DNA of 63,969 nt, filler included, from Hyphochytrium catenoides (GCA_900088475.1; 7 parts of 7 records of this genome joined end to end with filler, not necessarily neighbours in it), one strand, 5' to 3'. Numbered from the whole stretch's first letter, positions 1 to 15,684 are shown. Notes: generated by a model not told the origin, from the letters alone. Numbers and translations are program-made.

Positions 1-909
1 CTCTCTCTCTCTCTCTCTCTCTCTCTTGCTGGCTCTCTGCCATCATGAGCTGTAACGCCCACAGCCATAGAAAGGAAGAGGTAAAAGACGAGATAAAGCG
101 CATAGGTGCTTTAAGTATAGGACGCGAGAGACAGAGCGCTATGATGAGAGACAGAGTCCTTCGATGAGAAAAGAAACTACCTTTCGAGGCAGAAGGCGTT
201 AACGACTATGAAGATAATCCGTCTTCTCCTGGGGGAGCGGTCTGCTTCTGTGCAGGCTGCCGATTCCGGATAACACCTCTTTTTATTCTCAAGGAAAAGC
301 CTGTGTCCTGTGTCCCCTTTCTTGCTGACAAGGTTTTTCAAAAAACAGATATCCTTTCGGCTTCGGTTTTGGCGCTAACCCAAAGATAGACCTGGTGCTG
401 TATCTCTGAACAAAAATATTGAGCTAGGCTTTCTTAACCAACCAGTAGATTAACCTTCTACTCTATTCATCTCAGTGTTCTTCCTTCCCGTTAAGCGCCC
501 CGATCGTATGCCGCTACTTGCCTTGCAACCATTTCGGATTCGACATTTCGATTCGACTTCCCAGTATTATTTAAGAATAGTTCATTTTCCAGGGTGAGTG
601 TGATTACCAGTACTCGAAGATACTCCGGCCATGAGCTTCTACAGTTTAGGTATGGGATGCCTGTCAACAATACGTGCCCAACGTCCTCTCTCTCTCGTCG
701 CTTTCTTTCTTGATTGTTGCATCCTCTGTCTCTACATGGAGGCTCTTTAAGCGTGTCTGCTAACCACAATGCTAAATATCTCTTTTCACTCTTTCTCCAT
801 TTCTATATACTCTTTCTATTCCTCAGTGAGCTGTGTACAAACCAAACCCTTTGGAAGGCTCTTTTCACCCTTTTTACTACAGTCGTACTTCTCCCCTTTC
901 CTATTCCTT

Positions 910-1110
910 TGTCTCTCTCTCTCGGTCTCTTCTCTCTTTCTCTCTCTTCTCTCTTTCTCTCTTTCTCTCTCTCTCTCACTTCTCTCTTTCTCTCCTTTCT
1001 TTCTCTCTCTTCTCTCTTTCTCTCTTTCTCTCTCTCTCTCTCACTGTCACTTTCTCTCTCTCTCTCTCTCTCCCTCTCTCTCGCCCTCTCTCTCTCTCCC
1101 TCTCTCCTCT
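910..1110. repeat. (CT)n-rich microsatellite/pyrimidine tract; similar tracts at 1-27, 25520-25620, 30065-30120, 32300-32530, 33120-33190, 35200-35540 and 39520-39700
   Basis: Directly visible imperfect (CT)n/(GA)n runs. They generate the many Ser/Leu or Glu/Arg ORFs in the track. Confidence 0.95.
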
Positions 1111-1731
1111 GCCTTGTCTTTATGTTCCCTTTGCCATCATGCGAGCACGTTCTCCCACTCGGTCTTCCTCCTCATCGCTGCTGCCACTTGGCCTTTCGCT
1201 TTGGCATCGCGTTCTCACGAAGACGAGGTCCTTGCCTACTCTTTTGAGACGAGGAGATCCTCTCTCTCTCTTTCTCTCTCCTCTTCGCTGTGGCTCTTCG
1301 TCAACAGCTCCCGCTCTTGAATGTCCTGAGCCCAAGCTCAAAGCTGGAACCTAGGATTTCTCCCACCGCCAGCGAGTTCCTACCCCACGACATTGTTGCC
1401 GTTCTTCTCTCTCTCTCTCCGCATTCTCCCGCTCTGCTCTCTCCCTCTTCACTTTTAGCCTCTGTTCTCGGTGTGCCCGCGTGCGCATTGCGATCTTCAG
1501 GAAGTCTTTCCTGCTCGAGAAGTCATTCTTGTTCTTAGAAGGTCACATTGACGGAGAACGTAGGCTAAGAGTCAATCTTCACAGCTAACTTCTGAGAACC
1601 GCGTCGCCCTTTGTCTTTTTAAGCTGTCTTCCTCTCTTTCTCCTCTCTCTCCCGTTGACTTCTCTTTCTCCTCTCTGCAAACGGAGAATGTGAAAGGAGA
1701 TCCTCTGGGCTGAAGCTTTGCGGTTGGCAGA

Positions 1732-4176
1732 ATGGCAGCCAATGAGGTGCTTCAGAGCCCTTCTCTCTCCTTTGGAGAGGAAGATCTTACGAGGCTCAGA
1801 GATCCAGACGACGAAGGTAGGGAGAAAGATCTCTTAGCGGTCTCTTTATAAGTCATCTCGCCTTCCTTTCTTGCCGTCTTTCATCACCTTGAGACAGGGT
1901 GCTGGCCCTCTCTCTGCTGCGATCTTACCTCTCTCCTTTGACTTCTGTCGTCGTTTCCTTCATGTCAAACCGTTGAAAGTCTTCATCTTCTCGTTATCTC
2001 TCTTTCTCTCTTACTTTCCCTCTGTCTCCTTCCTTCTCTCCCTTGTTCTCGCTCTCTTTCTTATGGGAGATACACTGCGTATTCGCTCACCGTCTGTCAT
2101 TGTCCGTCTCCCTGCAATCTTCTAGGTTTTGATGATCCGCAGCACAAGAGGAAGCACAATCTCTCTTCCTTGCACAGCAGCGGCTCCTTAGCATCAGACA
2201 GCGATGAGGTGATGTACCTGACATCTTCTTCTTCCTGCTCGCCCCGCAGCAAGGAGCAGCTTGCCGCTGACGGAGGAGGTGGCAAAGGGAAGCAGGAAGA
2301 CACTCCTCATAAACGGCGGAGAGAGCACAGCCCTTTCTTTCCTCTCTCTTCTGCAAGTAAGGACTTCAAGCCGTCTCCATCGCTCTCTCGCCTCGAGGGG
2401 ACGCCAGACTCCTTGTCGTCTCTTGAAAACGATCAATCAGTGAGAGGAATCAAAGGGAGCGACGAAGGGAGGAATTCCCTCCTGAAGTCTCCCCGTACGC
2501 CGCTGTCCACTGCAGCTAGTGACGCTTCCTTCTACAGCGCTCTAGCAACCCCGGTGCCTTCCAGTCTTTCGTCTTCTTCTTCTTCTTCTCCCTACCTGTC
2601 CTCGCCGTCCACAGCTCTCCCAAATGCTCCTTTGTCCATACGAAAGCCTGAAGGAGGGAATGTACAGGGATTCAGCTCCCAGTGGAGACAGCTTTCTTCT
2701 TTAGGATCGTCTTCCCTTCCTCTCTCGACCCGGAATAGAGCAGCATCGGCCTCGGATGTCTCTCACTCTCTCGACATGGTCACAGAGGACTTTGCGGCCC
2801 TCTCCTCGCCTCGATGCTCTCTCGAGCCATCCAAGGACTTTGGCGGGCGCGCCTCTTATTCCTCTTTCTCTTCCTCTGTCTCCACGCCACGGAGAGAAAG
2901 GTCCTCATCCTCCGGCAGTAACTCCAGCTTTGCTCTTCCGACTCCTTCATCTCTCCCTCCTTCCGGTGCTAGCTCCTCAACTTCACTTCCATCTTTCTTC
3001 TCCTCTTCTCCCGCAAAAGACAGGCCAACATCGCGTATGACAATGGGAGCGAGGAAACAGCGGCAAATGTCACTCACTATTGATGTGCGTGACACTTCGA
3101 TGGCTACAGAGGGAGACCCAGGAGGAATGATCGGAGAAGGGGACGGATGCTACGCTCGTCCTGAGCTTGAAAGTAGCCGCCGCAACCAAGAAAAATATAA
3201 GAAGATATGCTCTCCCATATTGGATCACATCTTCGTCGGGGGCAGTGCTGCAGCTCAGAACAAGGCAGAACTCTTGGGCTTAGGCATCACTCACGTGATC
3301 AACTGTGCGGGCAAGGTGGCGCCAGACTTTTTTCCTGAGAGCTTTAACTATTGCACCTTCCGGATGAACGATCATGACTCTCAGGACATCACTGGACTCT
3401 TCTACAATGCGATTGAGTTTATTGAAGAGGCCAGGAAAAACGGTGGAAAGGTCTTTATACACTGTTTGAAGGGGATCTCTCGGTCACCAGCGATCGCCAT
3501 CGCCTACCTGGTGTGGGAGAGAAAATGGAGCTATGAAGAAGCATACAAGTTTGTCAAACAAGCGAGGCCGGTCGTCAATCCCAATCCGGGTTTCGTCTTC
3601 CAGCTGTGCGAATGGGAGCAAAGCAAGCCTCATGTCTCGAGACTCCCCGCAGTGTTCCGCGTCGATAGGCATCCGCCACCACCTGCTCAGCCCGCTGGTA
3701 CAGCTAAAGGGGGAGGAGAAGGCAAGGATGACGCTCGAACAGGGAAAGAACGATCCGCTTCTCTTGACAACTCTTCCTCGCCACTCCGTACAGCCTGGTA
3801 TCCTACGCTGTCATGTCCGCTGCACGTGACAGAAGAGGAGCTGCTAAGACCGTCCCAGGCGCTCTCAACGCACTGTTTGATCATTGCCGACAAAGAAAGG
3901 ATGTTTGCTTGGTATGGAAAGGGCTGTCCAAAGGAGTTCAGGGAGGTTGCCGCCGTTGCCTGTCGGCAATTGGGGACATATGAAGGCTTTCCGTCTACTG
4001 TTGTACATACGAGTCAAGGGGAGGAACCAGAGGAGCTGTGGGACGTGCTGAGACGTCTGCCCCCTAAGGTGCCAGCATTGTCTTGTGCCCTTCCATTAAC
4101 CTCTGGGCGTAGTGAGCTACCTCTTGCCACTCCCAGAGGCGGAGGAAGAGGGAAACCCAACCTTTTTGCTGAGTAG
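1732..4176 (+). CDS. Dual-specificity (MAP kinase) phosphatase with Ser-rich N-terminus and C-terminal gelsolin-like domain (plant MKP1-type architecture)
   Basis: Exon 1 1732-1816 (MAANEVLQ...DPDDE), GT-AG intron 1817-2125, then exon 2 in frame with ORF 2170-4176. DSP motifs: ILDHIFVGG, GITHVINCA, catalytic VFIHCLKGISRS, RPVVNPNPGFVFQL. Gelsolin-like segment CLIIADKERMFAWYGKGC...QGEEPEELW. Confidence 0.88.
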
Positions 4177-11374: not shown

Positions 11375-11948
11375 TTAACTGGCTGCATGTGCAGGTGGAA
11401 GAACCTCCTTCGACATGCCCGCTGCCCAATCTGCCTCGTCCTGATTGTACTGCTTTTGTGCAACGTCCTTCAGTCTAAATGAAGAGTGATAAACATTAGT
11501 CAAACTAGATCCGTTGGAAAGTTAGGGTACGGTACGGATGACCTTACCGCCGCTTGTGCACCTTGCCTCGCTTGTGCTCATCCAGCGCAGCTTCGTTTGA
11601 GAAATGCCTCCCACAAGGTGTGCAATAGAACATGCCCAGGCTGATTCAAGATGGAGAAGTGGAAGTTATCAGATGACACCCAGTGCAACAGAGCAACAGA
11701 ATTCTCAGCTAACAGCCAGAAACAGATGCCAAAGCAGACCAAGCGCCTTATGATCGCCTCTTTATCGCATACCCTGGAAGGTCTTCGTCAAGCTCAAAGC
11801 TGGTGGGTTTGCCATCTGCCTCCTCCCGCTTTAGGTCGTCCTGAATTTGATCAATGTCTCTCCTGCGTCGCTTCGTGCTGTGCGCTCGCTTGTAGGATTT
11901 GTTCTTAGCATGCGCCCTCTTCTTGGGCTTCGTCCCTCTGTGGCCCAT
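11375..11948 (-). CDS. ZNF593: Zinc finger protein 593 / Bud20 (pre-60S export factor), 3 exons
   Basis: KRRRRDIDQIQDDL...LDEDLPG|LGMFYCTPCGRHFSNEAALDEHKRGKVHKRR|LKDVAQKQYNQDEADWAAGM...*. C2H2 finger and RDIDQI motif typical of Bud20. Confidence 0.93.
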
Positions 11949-12583
11949 AGCTCTTGCTTAGAACGTGTAAGGAATGCCTCCTTTCTGCTGGCCGCTAGGA
12001 TATCTACAAGAAAGTGGAACACTTTATGATCTGTCTAAAACAGATGCTGCGAAGAGGCTGCAAAGCCAGTGCTTGGTCTCGACGTGCCCACGCTGGCAAT
12101 GCGTAATGTTCCTGGAACAGCCGTTCATCAGAAGAAGCAGCTCTTGAAGACTGCTCGCAGATGTGATGAAGGGCAATGGCGATGTGAACTGGTGAAACTA
12201 ACAGAATGATAGCAAGTTGACTGGTTCTGAACGCAGAAAAACCTCTGGGAAAAATCATCCTGAACAATAACTAGACCTTCTAGCTTCCCTAGGATTGTCG
12301 CACAGTGATCTTCTTACAAAACAGGCATCCTTTACTACTATGGAACAACCAGAAACATGCCACCAATTGTCGCTTTTACCTAACAACTGAACAATGTGAA
12401 CAGACAGCCAAACAACGACGAACAGGGCAATAAAATCCATTATCCAACACGATGTCAGCACTGGGCCAAACTGCACAGCCGGACTCCATTAGTGTCGCCT
12501 CCTTACATACATCAAAGGGTATATTATAACGTATTTTACATAAATCTGTTGGAGCCGCTTTGTTTTCTCTCTAGGAGCTCACC

Positions 12584-14490
12584 CTAGCACGATCCCACTC
12601 TCTTTTTCATGATCGTATCAAGATTAAGGCCACATTGATCCGCTAGCCTTGAGAGATAGAGTAGACAGTCACTGAGCTCCTCTCCAAGGTGAACTTTGTC
12701 CTTAATCGTCCAGTCTGGAGGATGACGTGTAAGAATTAGTGGCATTAGTAGGGCAACAACAGGTAGCTGAGTCGGTCAAGAGGGATGGGTGAAGAAGGAT
12801 CAATATGGGGATAGGCACCCCAGCGAGCAGAAAGACAAAACGTGTATGTAGGTATTAAGCAAGAAAGGACAAGGAGAACCGAGCTGGGAGGGAGGAGAAA
12901 TGAGCTCGCACCTCGCAAGCCGACGTCAACCTCGCCTTTCCACTGGAAGCACTCACATAGCTCTCCAAGCTCTCCGGTCTAGGTGAAGATGGTGATAATG
13001 AGGAAACACGAAGGCAGAAAAGACATGCGCTTACTCTTACTTACCAATGCGAGCGCAAGATTTCTGGGAAGATGATACTGCAGGAGAGGTGGAGAGATTG
13101 GTGGAGACGGGAGAACGAGAGAAGAAGATGTTAACAGGCTTGTTTTCCTATAGGAACGAGAGTGAACCTCAAACAGATTAAGAGAGTAGTGGAAGGACTC
13201 AATTTTCCCGTCCCAAACGCTTCGCAGCGTCTTGTCCTTTCGTCGCTCCTGCCTTCCTCACCTGGTTCCAGTCTCTCTCCTCAGCAAACGCTCTCATCGC
13301 TTCTGTAATGCTGCTTAGCTCTACACTCTGCCAGCCCTTCGCATGCCTATAGTAGTCCTCTTCCCTAAAGGGCACATGGAAGGCCTGTGATCTGCCTGAT
13401 GTCGAATATTCCGTGTATTTGGAGGACGAACCCTTCACCTATAGGACCGCCCAATGTCCGGGAGGAGACGGAAATAGTAACAAAGATTGTAACGTCAGCC
13501 TTCTTACATGAGGAGTTTGTGGCAGTACGACACTGACTAAAAACTTAACGAAGCTCTTAAGACGAGACGGCTTAGAGGGTAATGCAAAGACGTTAGAGTT
13601 AATGATGGACGTCAACACCAACTTACCAGCTCTGCTGGATACTTGATTCTATTCTTCTCGATCTTTCTGAGTGCCGCCTGGCCAATATCGATCCCACAAG
13701 AGTCTAGGCCGGAATAAAGTCTCAGCAAGGACATGGACTTAGAATAGACGTTAAGCGAGGAAACAGCTAGTGCGAGAACCTAACGAGCAGCTAGTGCGAG
13801 AACGAAGCGCAACGTGTCATCAAATAGGAAGACAAGCTGATGGCAGATATCGGAGATGCTTATTGAAAGCAGCCGAAAGGGAGCGTTAAGGTAACATAGT
13901 CCCCTGTGATATCAAGCGAGAAGCAACGAAAGTGAACCATAGCCCTAAAGAGTTTACCTGAAATAGCAATAAGTCCTATCAGTACTTCCGCAAGGGCGTC
14001 CTCAGCTCTCAAAAATTCCTCATTTGAGACTCCTGCAAGGTAGAGTGCGCGGCAGTCTGAGTTCCGTTATAATGAGGGGAACGCTTGGCAAAAATCAGCT
14101 GAAGCCGCACAAACCTAAGGTTGGAACTAGAAAAGTTTCAGTTTCCATTGCCTCCGCAACTCCAGCCACTTTAGTGATCTGCACATTGTGAGGTAATGAG
14201 TATGTGACATCAGGGCATCAGGCCAATCTTACCAATGAGAAGAGGAGCGACCTTGGCTACAGATTTGAAAAAGATGCGTTAGTCTCCCGGATTCGTGCTA
14301 AATTGAACCATTGCAGGCGAACCTTCGTGTGGGTGTTTTCCTTTCTTAGTGTTGCAACTTGCCGGCGAAGTGTCTCCATATTTACACTGGATACACTGCT
14401 TGTTCCAGTCTCCGACAGCGTCTGTCCTTCTTGTCTGGCCGCCTGAGGCTGTTGACTGTTGACTCCTTCCACAATTAGTCCGTCCGTCAT
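12584..14490 (-). CDS. DCTPP1: dCTP pyrophosphatase 1 (MazG-like all-alpha NTP-PPase) with two tandem DCTPP1 repeats, 9 exons
   Basis: Repeat 2: MRAFAEERDWNQ|YHLPRNLALAL|TGELGELCECFQWKGEVDVGLR|DWTIKDKVHLGEELSDCLLYLSRLADQCGLNL. Repeat 1: METLRRQVATLRKENTHTK|PRSLLFSL|ITKVAGVAEAM...|VSNEEFLRAEDALAEVLIGLIAIS|DSCGIDIGQAALRKIEKNRIKYPAEL|VKGSSSKYTEY. All junctions are GT-AG and in phase. Confidence 0.88.
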
Positions 14491-15120: not shown

Positions 15121-15684
15121 ATGGGACCGCCACCACCACCAGGTATAAACTGTAGTCTAAGCAGTATGTGGGTTCTATGTGGTTGACATAAATGTATTCT
15201 TTGTTCAGGAGAAGAGAAGATTGTCATCATGAGGGCCATTGGAGGAGAGGTGGGAGCCGCTGCCACTCTTGCCCCTAAAGTGGGTCCTCTTGGTCTTTCT
15301 CCTAAGAAAGTTGGAGAGGACATCCAGAAGGCCACCATGGACTGGAAGGGTCTTCCTGTCACTGTGAAGCTGACCATTGTCAACCGTCAGGCCACAGTCT
15401 CAGTCATCCCTTCTGCTTCTTCTCTGATCATGAAGGCTCTCAACGAGCCTCCTCGTGACAGAAAGAAGGTCAAGAACATCAAGCACGACGGTAACCTTAC
15501 TTTGGACCAGGTCATCGACGTTGCTCGCGTGATGAGGTCTCGCTCTATGGCCAAGAAGCTTGAGGGCACTGTTAAGGAGATCCTGGGTACCTGCAACTCT
15601 ATCGGATGCACTGTCAATGGATCTGCTCCTACTGAGATCCAGCGCCAAATCGCTGATGGCGAGATTAGTGTCCCTGAAGAGTAA
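15121..15684 (+). CDS. RPL12: 60S ribosomal protein L12 (uL11)
   Basis: Exon 1 15121-15142, intron 15143-15208, then ...[36 protein letters not shown]...[14 protein letters not shown]...[15 protein letters not shown]. Confidence 0.98.

What the first reader, a model, noticed from the sequence alone, without database searches (positions are those of the whole stretch)
12584..14490. Single-chain tandem DCTPP1 with complementary half-degenerate repeats (candidate covalent pseudo-heterodimer)
Seen: the spliced gene encodes two DCTPP1/MazG repeats with matching intron positions (phase 0 after PRSLLFSL and PRNLALAL; phase 1 after PTL-G and GLR-D), which points to internal duplication. Repeat 2 keeps the acidic metal ligands (GELGELCE, EELSD) and the ERDWNQ/QW substrate residues, but ends before the conserved C-terminal 'KxxKNxxKYP...KY' arm. 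Repeat 1 has degraded ligands (TKVAGVAE, DALAE) yet keeps that arm (RKIEKNRIKYPAELVKGSSSKY). Known: all-alpha NTP-PPases are homo-oligomers whose active sites are completed by the partner subunit. Inference: the fusion has subfunctionalised into one composite active site, possibly with altered specificity for modified dNTPs.
Basis: partly seen in the sequence, partly recalled or inferred. Interest (0 to 1): 0.75.

Follow-up and report, generated by a model that had tools for sequence, protein, structure and literature searches.

The report
Two-in-one dCTPase with complementary halves
This eukaryotic gene fuses two copies of the nucleotide-cleaning enzyme DCTPP1: one copy keeps only a C-terminal arm and the other keeps only the catalytic centre. 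The same split turns up in several other lineages, which argues that the two halves build one shared active site.

Summary
On the minus strand, 14490..12584, nine GT-AG exons give one open frame with two DCTPP1/MazG-like repeats. A family HMM built here scores repeat 1 at 78 bits and repeat 2 at 143 bits.

- **Repeat 1** has lost W47, F50, H51, E63, E66, W73, E95 and Y102 (mouse numbering). It keeps K121, K124, N125, K128, Y129, P130 and the GSSxKY tail. Identity to the family consensus is 23% in the core and 73% in the arm.
- **Repeat 2** keeps every catalytic and base-pocket residue and stops right where the arm should start. No second arm exists anywhere in the piece.
- **One correction:** exon 5 most likely starts at 13703, giving a 271-aa protein.

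The gene is not unique. Database tandems P0005 and P0053 show the same split. Hydra, Clytia and an algal-like group show it in reverse domain order. Tandems with both catalytic centres intact keep the NxxKYP part of both arms.

AlphaFold models of P0005 and the Hydra protein pack the two domains confidently. They superpose over both domains on single-chain dimeric dUTPases.

The best reading is a covalent pseudo-heterodimer with one composite site per chain. No RNA data were available, and altered specificity is unsupported. I rate it a new variant of a known kind.

The parts
14323..14490 (-). Exon 1: start codon, N-terminal tail and degenerate helix 1 of repeat 1 (ERDW..FH replaced by RKENTHT)
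14233..14256 (-). Exon 2: 24-nt micro-exon PRSLLFSL. The intron after it is at HMM column 55|56, phase 0.
14115..14178 (-). Exon 3: helix 2 of repeat 1 with the metal ligands lost (K67 for E63, G70 for E66, T77 for W73). The intron after it is in phase 1 at column 79/80.
13958..14032 (-). Exon 4: helix 3 of repeat 1 (A98 for E95, E101 for D98, G105 for Y102)
13627..13703 (-). Exon 5 (preferred acceptor at 13703; an alternative in-frame acceptor at 13766 adds 21 aa): helix 4 and the conserved arm of repeat 1, holding KNRIKYP with N128 (13651-13653) and Y132 (13639-13641)
13262..13438 (-). Exon 6: a single exon holding the end of the repeat-1 arm (KGSSSKYTEY, 13406-13438), a 26-aa linker (13328-13405) and helix 1 of repeat 2 (ERDWNQ, W193 at 13268-13270). 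There is no stop codon in the exon, and the only ATG lies inside helix 1 of repeat 2.
13045..13077 (-). Exon 7: YHLPRNLALAL of repeat 2. The intron after it is at column 55|56, phase 0, the same place as after exon 2.
12912..12978 (-). Exon 8: helix 2 of repeat 2 with intact ligands (E209, E212) and W219. The intron after it is in phase 1 at column 79/80, the same place as after exon 3.
12584..12714 (-). Exon 9: helix 3 (E241, D244, Y248) and the start of helix 4 of repeat 2. It ends ...TIMKKRVGSC, with stop TAG at 12584-12586, where the arm would begin.
13406..14391 (-). Repeat 1 as a whole (residues 34-147 of the 271-aa model): catalytically dead DCTPP1 unit that keeps the arm
12587..13327 (-). 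Repeat 2 as a whole (residues 174-271): catalytic DCTPP1 unit without the arm

Best explanation
The gene encodes one polypeptide made of two DCTPP1-type (MazG-like, all-alpha) NTP pyrophosphatase units that pack against each other like the tight dimer of the ordinary enzyme.

Repeat 2 is the catalytic unit. It supplies the Mg2+ ligands (E209, E212, E241, D244) and the base pocket (W193, H197, W219, Y248).

Repeat 1 is a dead scaffold. Its one conserved part is the C-terminal arm (KNRIKYP...GSSSKY). This arm carries the asparagine that reads the deoxyribose 3'-OH and a tyrosine that lines the pocket. It reaches across to complete the site of repeat 2.

The reciprocal site (repeat-1 ligands plus repeat-2 arm) has been dismantled on both sides. 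So each chain has one composite site.

In DCTPP1 the two stacking tryptophans come from different chains, and repeat 1 has neither. The chain therefore probably pairs with a second chain into a pseudo-tetramer with two active sites instead of four.

The expected activity is ordinary house-cleaning hydrolysis of dCTP-type nucleotides.

Shown here: the sequence anatomy, the homology, the recurrence of the pattern and the predicted packing in homologues. Inferred: the arm acting across domains in this protein, the oligomeric state and the activity.
For: - One ORF. The end of the repeat-1 arm and helix 1 of repeat 2 lie in the same exon and frame with no stop between them. The exon 5-6 junction rebuilds KYPAEL|VKGSSSKYTEY, collinear with the family consensus.
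- Mosaic conservation. Repeat 1 is 23% identical to the consensus in the core and 73% in the arm. Repeat 2 is 65% in the core and has no arm.
- Full-length collinear homologues with the same split. P0005 is 41% identical (E 6e-52) and P0053 is 37% identical (E 2e-47). P0053 is a single uninterrupted ORF on a 538-kb contig. P0005 is a complete ORF on two contigs of about 1 kb.
- Reverse-order versions occur in Hydra vulgaris, Clytia and P0130/P0162. Tandems with both catalytic centres intact (P0008, Globisporangium splendens P0014, Aplysia P0126, P0124, P0125, Discosporangium P0127) keep the NxxKYP part of both arms. An arm acting on its own domain would leave every split protein without any complete site.
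- Literature. Each DCTPP1 site is built from three chains, with W47/F50 from one, W73 from a second, and Y102/Y129 from a third (PMC13616921). N125 equals N179 of C. jejuni dUTPase, whose ligands are E46, E49, E74 and D77 (PMC2954211).
- AlphaFold2 models. P0005 has pLDDT 80.8 and pTM 0.77, with both domains above 90. Hydra P0025 has pLDDT 84.2 and pTM 0.84.
- Whole-model alignments to single-chain dimeric dUTPases. P0005: 5myi Z 10.6 with 156 residues aligned, 4dk4 Z 9.8. Hydra: 5myd Z 12.2 with 156 of 163 residues aligned, 2cic Z 10.0. The degenerate domain of P0005 superposes on DCTPP1 residues 25-129/133 at Z about 10.
Against: - No RNA evidence. No RNA run was listed, so the splice pattern, the 3' end and a possible repeat-2-only transcript are untested.
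- The window's own spliced protein was not folded or searched as a whole. The structural support comes from homologues that are 37-41% identical.
- The tools give no coordinates, so I could not verify that the arm of the dead domain actually reaches the ligands of the live one.
- The published description puts Y102 and Y129 on the same chain. Here Y102 is conserved only in the catalytic domain and is G in repeat 1. So the site cannot be an exact copy of the canonical one.
- Z scores of 9-12 are middling for helical bundles, according to the tool's own note.
- A single origin of the degenerate-first proteins is not rejected, so the number of independent replicates is uncertain.
Confidence: 0.62

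Rival explanations
1. Repeat 2 is a self-sufficient enzyme and repeat 1 is only a scaffold or regulatory pseudo-domain. On this reading the arm of repeat 1 is conserved for packing or oligomerisation, not for catalysis.
For: Repeat 2 holds all metal ligands and both tryptophans. Crystallised core constructs of DCTPP1 are short (2oie core segment, chain lengths 101-109). Y102 of the arm-bearing domain is not conserved across the split proteins.
Against: N125, Y129, K124 and K128 are kept in the dead domain of every split protein except K124 in Hydra (L there), while the rest of that domain decays. N125 is the residue that reads the 3'-OH (PMC2954211). The catalytic domain lost its own arm in every split lineage but in no tandem with both centres intact. 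That is not expected if the arm were dispensable or purely structural.
Confidence: 0.15
2. Gene-model artefact. The locus would make separate products (a repeat-1 protein and a repeat-2 protein from an internal start), or repeat 2 would gain an arm from an exon I did not recognise. In either case there is no covalent pseudo-heterodimer lacking an arm.
For: There are no RNA data. A homologue (L004 versus L005) has an intron exactly in front of its arm. An in-frame GT...AG element of 28 nt after ...MKKR would join to RENKAAPTDLCKIRYNIP, which faintly recalls an arm.
Against: Exon 6 carries the arm end and helix 1 of repeat 2 in one frame. It has no stop, and its only ATG lies inside helix 1. No other N..[KR][YF]P motif and no arm-like HMM hit exists in the 30.6-kb piece. 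A 28-nt intron would be about half the size of the shortest intron in this gene, which is 54 nt. The next gene downstream starts about 600 nt away. Homologues P0053 and P0005 have the same fused, arm-less layout in uninterrupted ORFs.
Confidence: 0.1
3. Non-catalytic relic. With neither domain complete, the protein would be a pseudoenzyme (for example a nucleotide binder) or a gene on its way to loss.
For: Repeat 1 sits on an extremely long branch (end branch 9.0). Repeat 2 lacks N125 and Y129.
Against: The frame is intact over nine exons with canonical splice sites. Repeat 2 is 65% identical to the consensus with every ligand kept, and the arm is 73% identical. The same layout persists in distant lineages, including annotated Hydra and Clytia genes.
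Confidence: 0.08

Closest known systems
DCTPP1 / RS21-C6 (XTP3-TPA), the single-domain all-alpha dCTP pyrophosphatase (PDB 2oie, 2oig, 6sqw, 7mu5)
   Same: Both repeats are homologous to it. Exon 9 alone hits RS21-C6 and DCTPP1 at E 0.005-0.01, and exon 5 hits its arm weakly at E 0.6. Repeat 2 is 52-63% identical to protist single-domain members. It has the same ligand motifs, the same tryptophans and the same KNxxKYP...GSSxKY arm.
   Different: The known enzyme is a homotetramer of identical 110-170-aa chains with four equivalent sites. Here two units are fused, and each has lost the half that the other keeps.
Single-chain 'dimeric' dUTPases (C. jejuni 1w2y/2cic, trypanosomatid 1ogk/4dk4/2yay, staphylococcal phage 5myd/5myi)
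   Same: They are thought to have arisen from a MazG-like ancestor by duplication, with the four-helix bundle inside one protomer and one site per protomer (PMC2954211). The ligands lie early in the chain and the sugar-reading Asn about 100 residues later. Models of tandem DCTPP1 homologues align to them across both domains.
   Different: There is no detectable sequence kinship beyond the superfamily (8-20% identity in the structural alignments). The window protein has the opposite order, with the arm donor first and the catalytic unit second. It is a recent derivative of DCTPP1 that still shows two recognisable repeats.
Tandem DCTPP1 proteins in databases: P0005 and P0053 (unnamed), Hydra vulgaris LOC100201866, Clytia hemisphaerica, P0130/P0162; with both centres intact, Globisporangium, Aplysia, Discosporangium, P0008, P0124, P0125
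   Same: P0005 and P0053 share the domain order and the same complementary losses. Hydra, Clytia and P0130/P0162 share the principle.
   Different: Identity to the window protein is only 37-41%. The hydrozoan and algal-like ones have the reverse order. All are uncharacterised entries, and I found no paper that describes them.
E. coli MazG (PDB 3cra/3crc), two MazG domains in one chain
   Same: It has a tandem of two MazG-type domains in one polypeptide. That the two domains are unequal in activity is from my memory of Lee et al. 2008 and was not checked here.
   Different: It belongs to a different family (PF03819 type, ribonucleotide-preferring). It is only a weak structural match, covering one domain (Z 6.1). 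No arm exchange of the DCTPP1 kind has been described.

Membership tests
DCTPP1 / MazG-like (Pfam PF12643, PF03819) | Significant sequence match to the family profile | tested here: met
   Exon by exon, only exon 9 reaches Pfam MazG-like, and it falls below the cut-off (19.3 bits against 27). A family HMM built here from 30 single-domain homologues that carry PF12643 and/or PF03819 gives repeat 2 143.5 bits and repeat 1 78.4 bits. blastp gives up to 63% identity for repeat 2 and 30-40% (E to 1e-23) for repeat 1. The spliced protein itself was not sent to Pfam.
DCTPP1 / MazG-like | Acidic Mg2+ ligands ExxE on helix 2 and ExxD on helix 3 | tested here: met
   Met in repeat 2 (E209, E212, E241, D244). 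Not met in repeat 1 (K67, G70, A98; D98 becomes E101).
DCTPP1 / MazG-like | Pyrimidine pocket residues W47, F50/H51, W73 and Y102 | tested here: met
   Repeat 2 has W193, Y196, H197, W219 and Y248. Repeat 1 has E, H, T, T and G. The residue roles are from PMC13291643 and PMC13616921.
DCTPP1 / MazG-like | C-terminal arm KxxKNxxKYP with the deoxyribose-reading Asn125 and with Tyr129 | tested here: met
   Met only in repeat 1 (N128, Y132, plus GSSSKY). Absent from repeat 2 and from the rest of the piece.
DCTPP1 / MazG-like | Homotetramer (dimer of dimers) with four equivalent sites | not testable with these tools
   The sequence predicts at most one site per chain. The oligomeric state is inferred only.
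DCTPP1 / MazG-like | Mg2+-dependent hydrolysis of dCTP and 5-modified dCTP to dCMP and PPi | not testable with these tools
   This needs an enzyme assay.
Dimeric dUTPase family | Sequence membership in the dUTPase_2-type family, with the five dUTPase motifs | tested here: not met
   Only structural similarity of homologue models was found, at 8-20% identity. No Pfam hit other than MazG types was found on any exon. It works like this family but is not a member.

The most novel reading that the evidence does not exclude
Tandem DCTPP1 genes would be repeated natural re-runs of the path that once produced dimeric dUTPases: fusion of a MazG-like dimer, followed by decay of one of its two cross-built sites. 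These re-runs happen in both domain orders, and the window gene represents the order opposite to dUTPases. In addition, the arm-donor domain has lost Y102, W47 and W73, which in the homotetramer help wall the base pocket. This would reshape the pocket so that these fused enzymes accept different (bulkier or differently modified) nucleotides than canonical DCTPP1.
Probability: 0.2. Interest if true: 0.7.

Novelty: new variant of a known kind. Interest (0 to 1): 0.5.

Why it matters
DCTPP1 is studied as a drug target, and its active site is known to be shared between chains. The split tandem proteins are a natural complementation experiment. They indicate which parts of the site act together and which act across subunits: the arm with N125 and Y129 works on the partner's metal centre.

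They also give a single-chain, one-site version of the enzyme that would be convenient for mechanistic work.

In evolutionary terms, they show an early stage of the route proposed for dimeric dUTPases. The stage recurs in several eukaryotic lineages and in both orientations.

For annotation, such genes should not be read as two genes or as a broken duplicate.

Tried and rejected
- RNA evidence: the look-up of sequencing runs listed no run.
- Exon 6 (arm, linker and helix 1) as a junction-specific probe:
  - phmmer against 1.8 billion representatives gave only two spurious repeat proteins, P0001 and P0002;
  - the metagenome scan gave nothing.
- The exon 9 stretch in the word-index protein search gave nothing, because family members are longer than the length window allows.
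- Aligning single exons as separate rows with P0005 and P0053 misplaced exons 1, 3, 4 and 6, so alignment A1 was dropped.
- A possible relic of the repeat-2 arm after the stop (RENKAAPTDLCKIRYNIP, reached by a 28-nt GT..AG element) was rejected as unsupported. The HMM scan does not pick it up and the 'intron' would be too short.
- A second arm elsewhere in the window: none.
- Independent origin of the three degenerate-first proteins: the tree puts the two domains of P0005 together (support 99) and those of P0053 together (90). AU tests do not reject a single origin (p 0.056, 0.55, 0.084), and repeat 1 of the window is too long a branch to place. I therefore claim only that the two orientations are separate events.
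- Synteny between the window and the P0053 locus: none within the flanks.
- Organism: not identified. The neighbouring uL11 exon matches wheat best among solved ribosomes. There are no tRNA or Rfam hits.
- The paper by Scaletti et al. on active mouse dCTPase is not in the library.

Full report
**What is in the sequence.**
The finding lies on the minus strand. Reading it and joining the pieces by coordinates in a local script gives nine exons with GT..AG borders. They form one open frame from the ATG at 14490 to the TAG at 12584-12586. An in-frame stop lies shortly upstream of the ATG.

Taken exon by exon, the public profiles see little:
- Only exon 9 touches Pfam MazG-like, and it falls below the cut-off.
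- Exon 9 hits RS21-C6/DCTPP1 among solved structures (E 0.005-0.01).
- Exon 5 hits the DCTPP1 C-terminal arm weakly (E 0.6).

**Getting relatives.**
- A junction-specific probe (exon 6) found nothing real in 1.8 billion representatives or in metagenomes.
- The exon 9 stretch found five metagenome loci with single-domain homologues. All carry the full arm KNAAKYPA.L.RGSSKKYTEY.
- One of these loci (L003) is intron-less and gave a referenceable query. With it, 1590 family members were found.
- A second search with a two-sequence profile added more tandem proteins.
- From 30 single-domain members I built a family HMM locally.

**The two repeats.**
All homologues show a 21-residue gap exactly at AVSSLNVYSKSMSLLRLYSGL. 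The tblastx match to an intron-less homologue starts at 13704. So the acceptor at 13703 is preferred, and the protein is 271 aa.

With that model the HMM gives two domains:
- repeat 1: 78.4 bits, HMM columns 9-147;
- repeat 2: 143.5 bits, HMM columns 19-118.

Column by column, in mouse numbering:
- Repeat 2 keeps W47, H51, E63, E66, E69, W73, E94, E95, D98 and Y102. F50 is Y, as in several domains with intact ligands. The repeat ends at column 118, just before the arm.
- Repeat 1 has E, H, T, K, G, T, A, E and G at W47, F50, H51, E63, E66, W73, E95, D98 and Y102. It keeps K121, K124, N125, K128, Y129, P130 and the KY of GSSxKY.
- Identity to the family consensus is 23% (core) and 73% (arm) for repeat 1. 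It is 65% (core) for repeat 2, which has no arm.

The intron claims also hold. Two intron positions coincide exactly in column and phase, and a third pair lies three codons apart.

A scan of every stop-free segment of the 30.6-kb piece finds matches with i-E below 0.1 only in the segments holding exons 5-9. There is only one N..KYP motif. Repeat 2 therefore has no arm in this window. The next gene downstream begins about 600 nt further on.

**One gene or two?**
The exon 5-6 junction rebuilds KYPAEL|VKGSSSKYTEY in register with the family. The same exon then runs without a stop through a 26-aa linker into helix 1 of repeat 2. Its only ATG lies inside that helix.

Two full-length collinear homologues exist:
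- P0005 (41% identical) is a complete ORF on two contigs of about 1 kb.
- P0053 (37% identical) is one uninterrupted 286-codon ORF on a 538-kb contig. No arm-like sequence lies within 700 nt downstream.

The fusion is therefore real as a gene type. For this window it still lacks RNA proof, because no RNA run was listed.

**The pattern recurs.**
Among the proteins fetched, tandem DCTPP1 falls into three kinds.

| Kind | Proteins | Layout |
|---|---|---|
| Both catalytic centres intact | P0008, Globisporangium splendens (P0014), Aplysia, P0124, P0125, Discosporangium; Colocasia may be a merged model; P0018 is truncated in domain 1 | Both domains keep their ligands and the NxxKYP part of the arm |
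| Degenerate-first | The window, P0005, P0053 | Dead domain with arm, then live domain with no functional arm |
| Degenerate-last | Hydra vulgaris, Clytia, P0130/P0162 | Live domain without arm, then dead domain with arm |

In every split protein, the domain that lost its ligands kept the arm, and the domain that kept its ligands lost the arm.

If the arm served its own domain, all these proteins would have no complete site. If it serves the partner, each has exactly one. That is also the expected outcome once one of two cross-built sites is hit by a mutation and its remaining parts are freed from selection.

The two orientations cannot be the same event. Whether the three degenerate-first proteins share one origin is unresolved. 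The tree pairs the two domains within P0005 and within P0053, but AU tests do not reject a single origin.

**Fit with known structures.**
- Papers on human DCTPP1 state that each site is built from three chains: W47/F50 from one, W73 from another, and Y102/Y129 from a third (PMC13616921; PMC13291643).
- N125 is equated with N179 of C. jejuni dUTPase, the residue that reads the 3'-OH. The dUTPase ligands are E46, E49, E74 and D77, much earlier in the same chain.
- Dimeric dUTPases are regarded as duplicated MazG-like units with the four-helix bundle inside one protomer (PMC2954211).
- AlphaFold2 models of P0005 (pLDDT 80.8, pTM 0.77) and Hydra P0025 (84.2, 0.84) place both domains confidently.
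- Each domain matches DCTPP1 (TM 0.82-0.88 by target; Z about 10-11).
- The whole models align over both domains to single-chain dimeric dUTPases: 5myi Z 10.6 and 4dk4 Z 9.8 for P0005; 5myd Z 12.2 and 2cic Z 10.0 for Hydra.
- These Z values are middling for helical bundles, and the tools give no coordinates. Arm-to-site contact is therefore inferred, not seen.

**Mechanism proposed.**
Repeat 2 binds the metals and the base. The arm of repeat 1 supplies N128, Y132 and the lysines. The reciprocal site is dismantled.

Repeat 1 has neither tryptophan, and the W47/W73 sandwich is made by two chains in DCTPP1. A complete pocket therefore probably needs two repeat-2 domains. That implies a dimer of fused chains with two sites. 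This step is inference.

One mismatch remains. The paper puts Y102 on the same chain as Y129, but Y102 is conserved only in the catalytic domains here. So the site is not an exact copy. This is the only hint towards a changed pocket. Otherwise nothing supports altered specificity.

**Novelty.**
Three literature searches found nothing on tandem or split DCTPP1. The Hydra and Clytia entries are 'uncharacterized protein'.

The principle itself is known from dimeric dUTPases: a duplicated MazG-like unit in one chain with one site. I therefore rate this a new variant of a known kind. The window gene is one of at least three members of the reverse-of-dUTPase order.

**Limits.**
- The spliced protein has no reference, so I did not send it to any database search or fold tool.
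- It was assembled only inside the sandbox from window coordinates. There it was compared with sequences already fetched.
- The organism was not identified.
- The list of tandem proteins is a lower bound, because only the best 120 hits of each search were shown.

Noticed in passing
window 700-1350, + strand: A CT-rich simple-repeat stretch gives three overlapping long 'ORFs' made of SLSLSL-type low complexity. It is almost certainly not coding.
   Followed up: no
window 2170-4176, + strand: A 668-codon open frame with a dual-specificity phosphatase domain (Pfam DSPc, E 4e-34) sits behind a long serine-rich low-complexity N-terminus.
   Followed up: partly
window 15229-15684, + strand: This exon of ribosomal protein uL11 (eukaryotic L12) lies head-to-head with the tandem gene, about 740 nt from its start codon. 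Among solved ribosomes it matches wheat best (228 bits, against 209-212 for animals).
   Followed up: partly
window about 11500-11960, - strand: The next gene downstream reads MGHRGTKPKKRAH...FYCTPCGRHFSNEAALDEHKRGKVHKRR. By eye this is a small C2H2 zinc-finger protein of the ZNF593/Bud20 type, with at least one intron.
   Followed up: no
window 12530-12606, - strand: A 28-nt GT..AG element right after ...TIMKKR would join in frame to RENKAAPTDLCKIRYNIP, which faintly recalls an arm. The HMM does not detect it. It may be a decayed remnant of the repeat-2 arm, or chance.
   Followed up: partly
L004 438-873 and L005 262-630: Two metagenome contigs carry the same single-domain DCTPP1 gene, one with and one without an intron placed exactly before the arm (LRK|MHRNAIKYP). 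They look like unspliced and spliced forms.
   Followed up: partly
P0126 (Aplysia californica) and P0124: In these tandems with both centres intact, one domain already shows first losses. Aplysia domain 1 has N125 changed to I and Y102 changed to C, and P0124 domain 2 has Y102 changed to C. This may be an early stage of the same asymmetry.
   Followed up: no
P0186 and P0216 (Marchantia polymorpha), P0077, P0096: These are other fusions of the DCTPP1 domain: with Myb/SANT-like domains (PF13837, PF10545) in Marchantia, with an RRM (PF00076) in P0077, and with PF02875 in P0096.
   Followed up: no
P0123 (Colocasia esculenta, 435 aa, 'partial'): Two complete, near-identical DCTPP1 units are separated by about 90 residues. 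This could be a true tandem, or two neighbouring genes merged by annotation.
   Followed up: no
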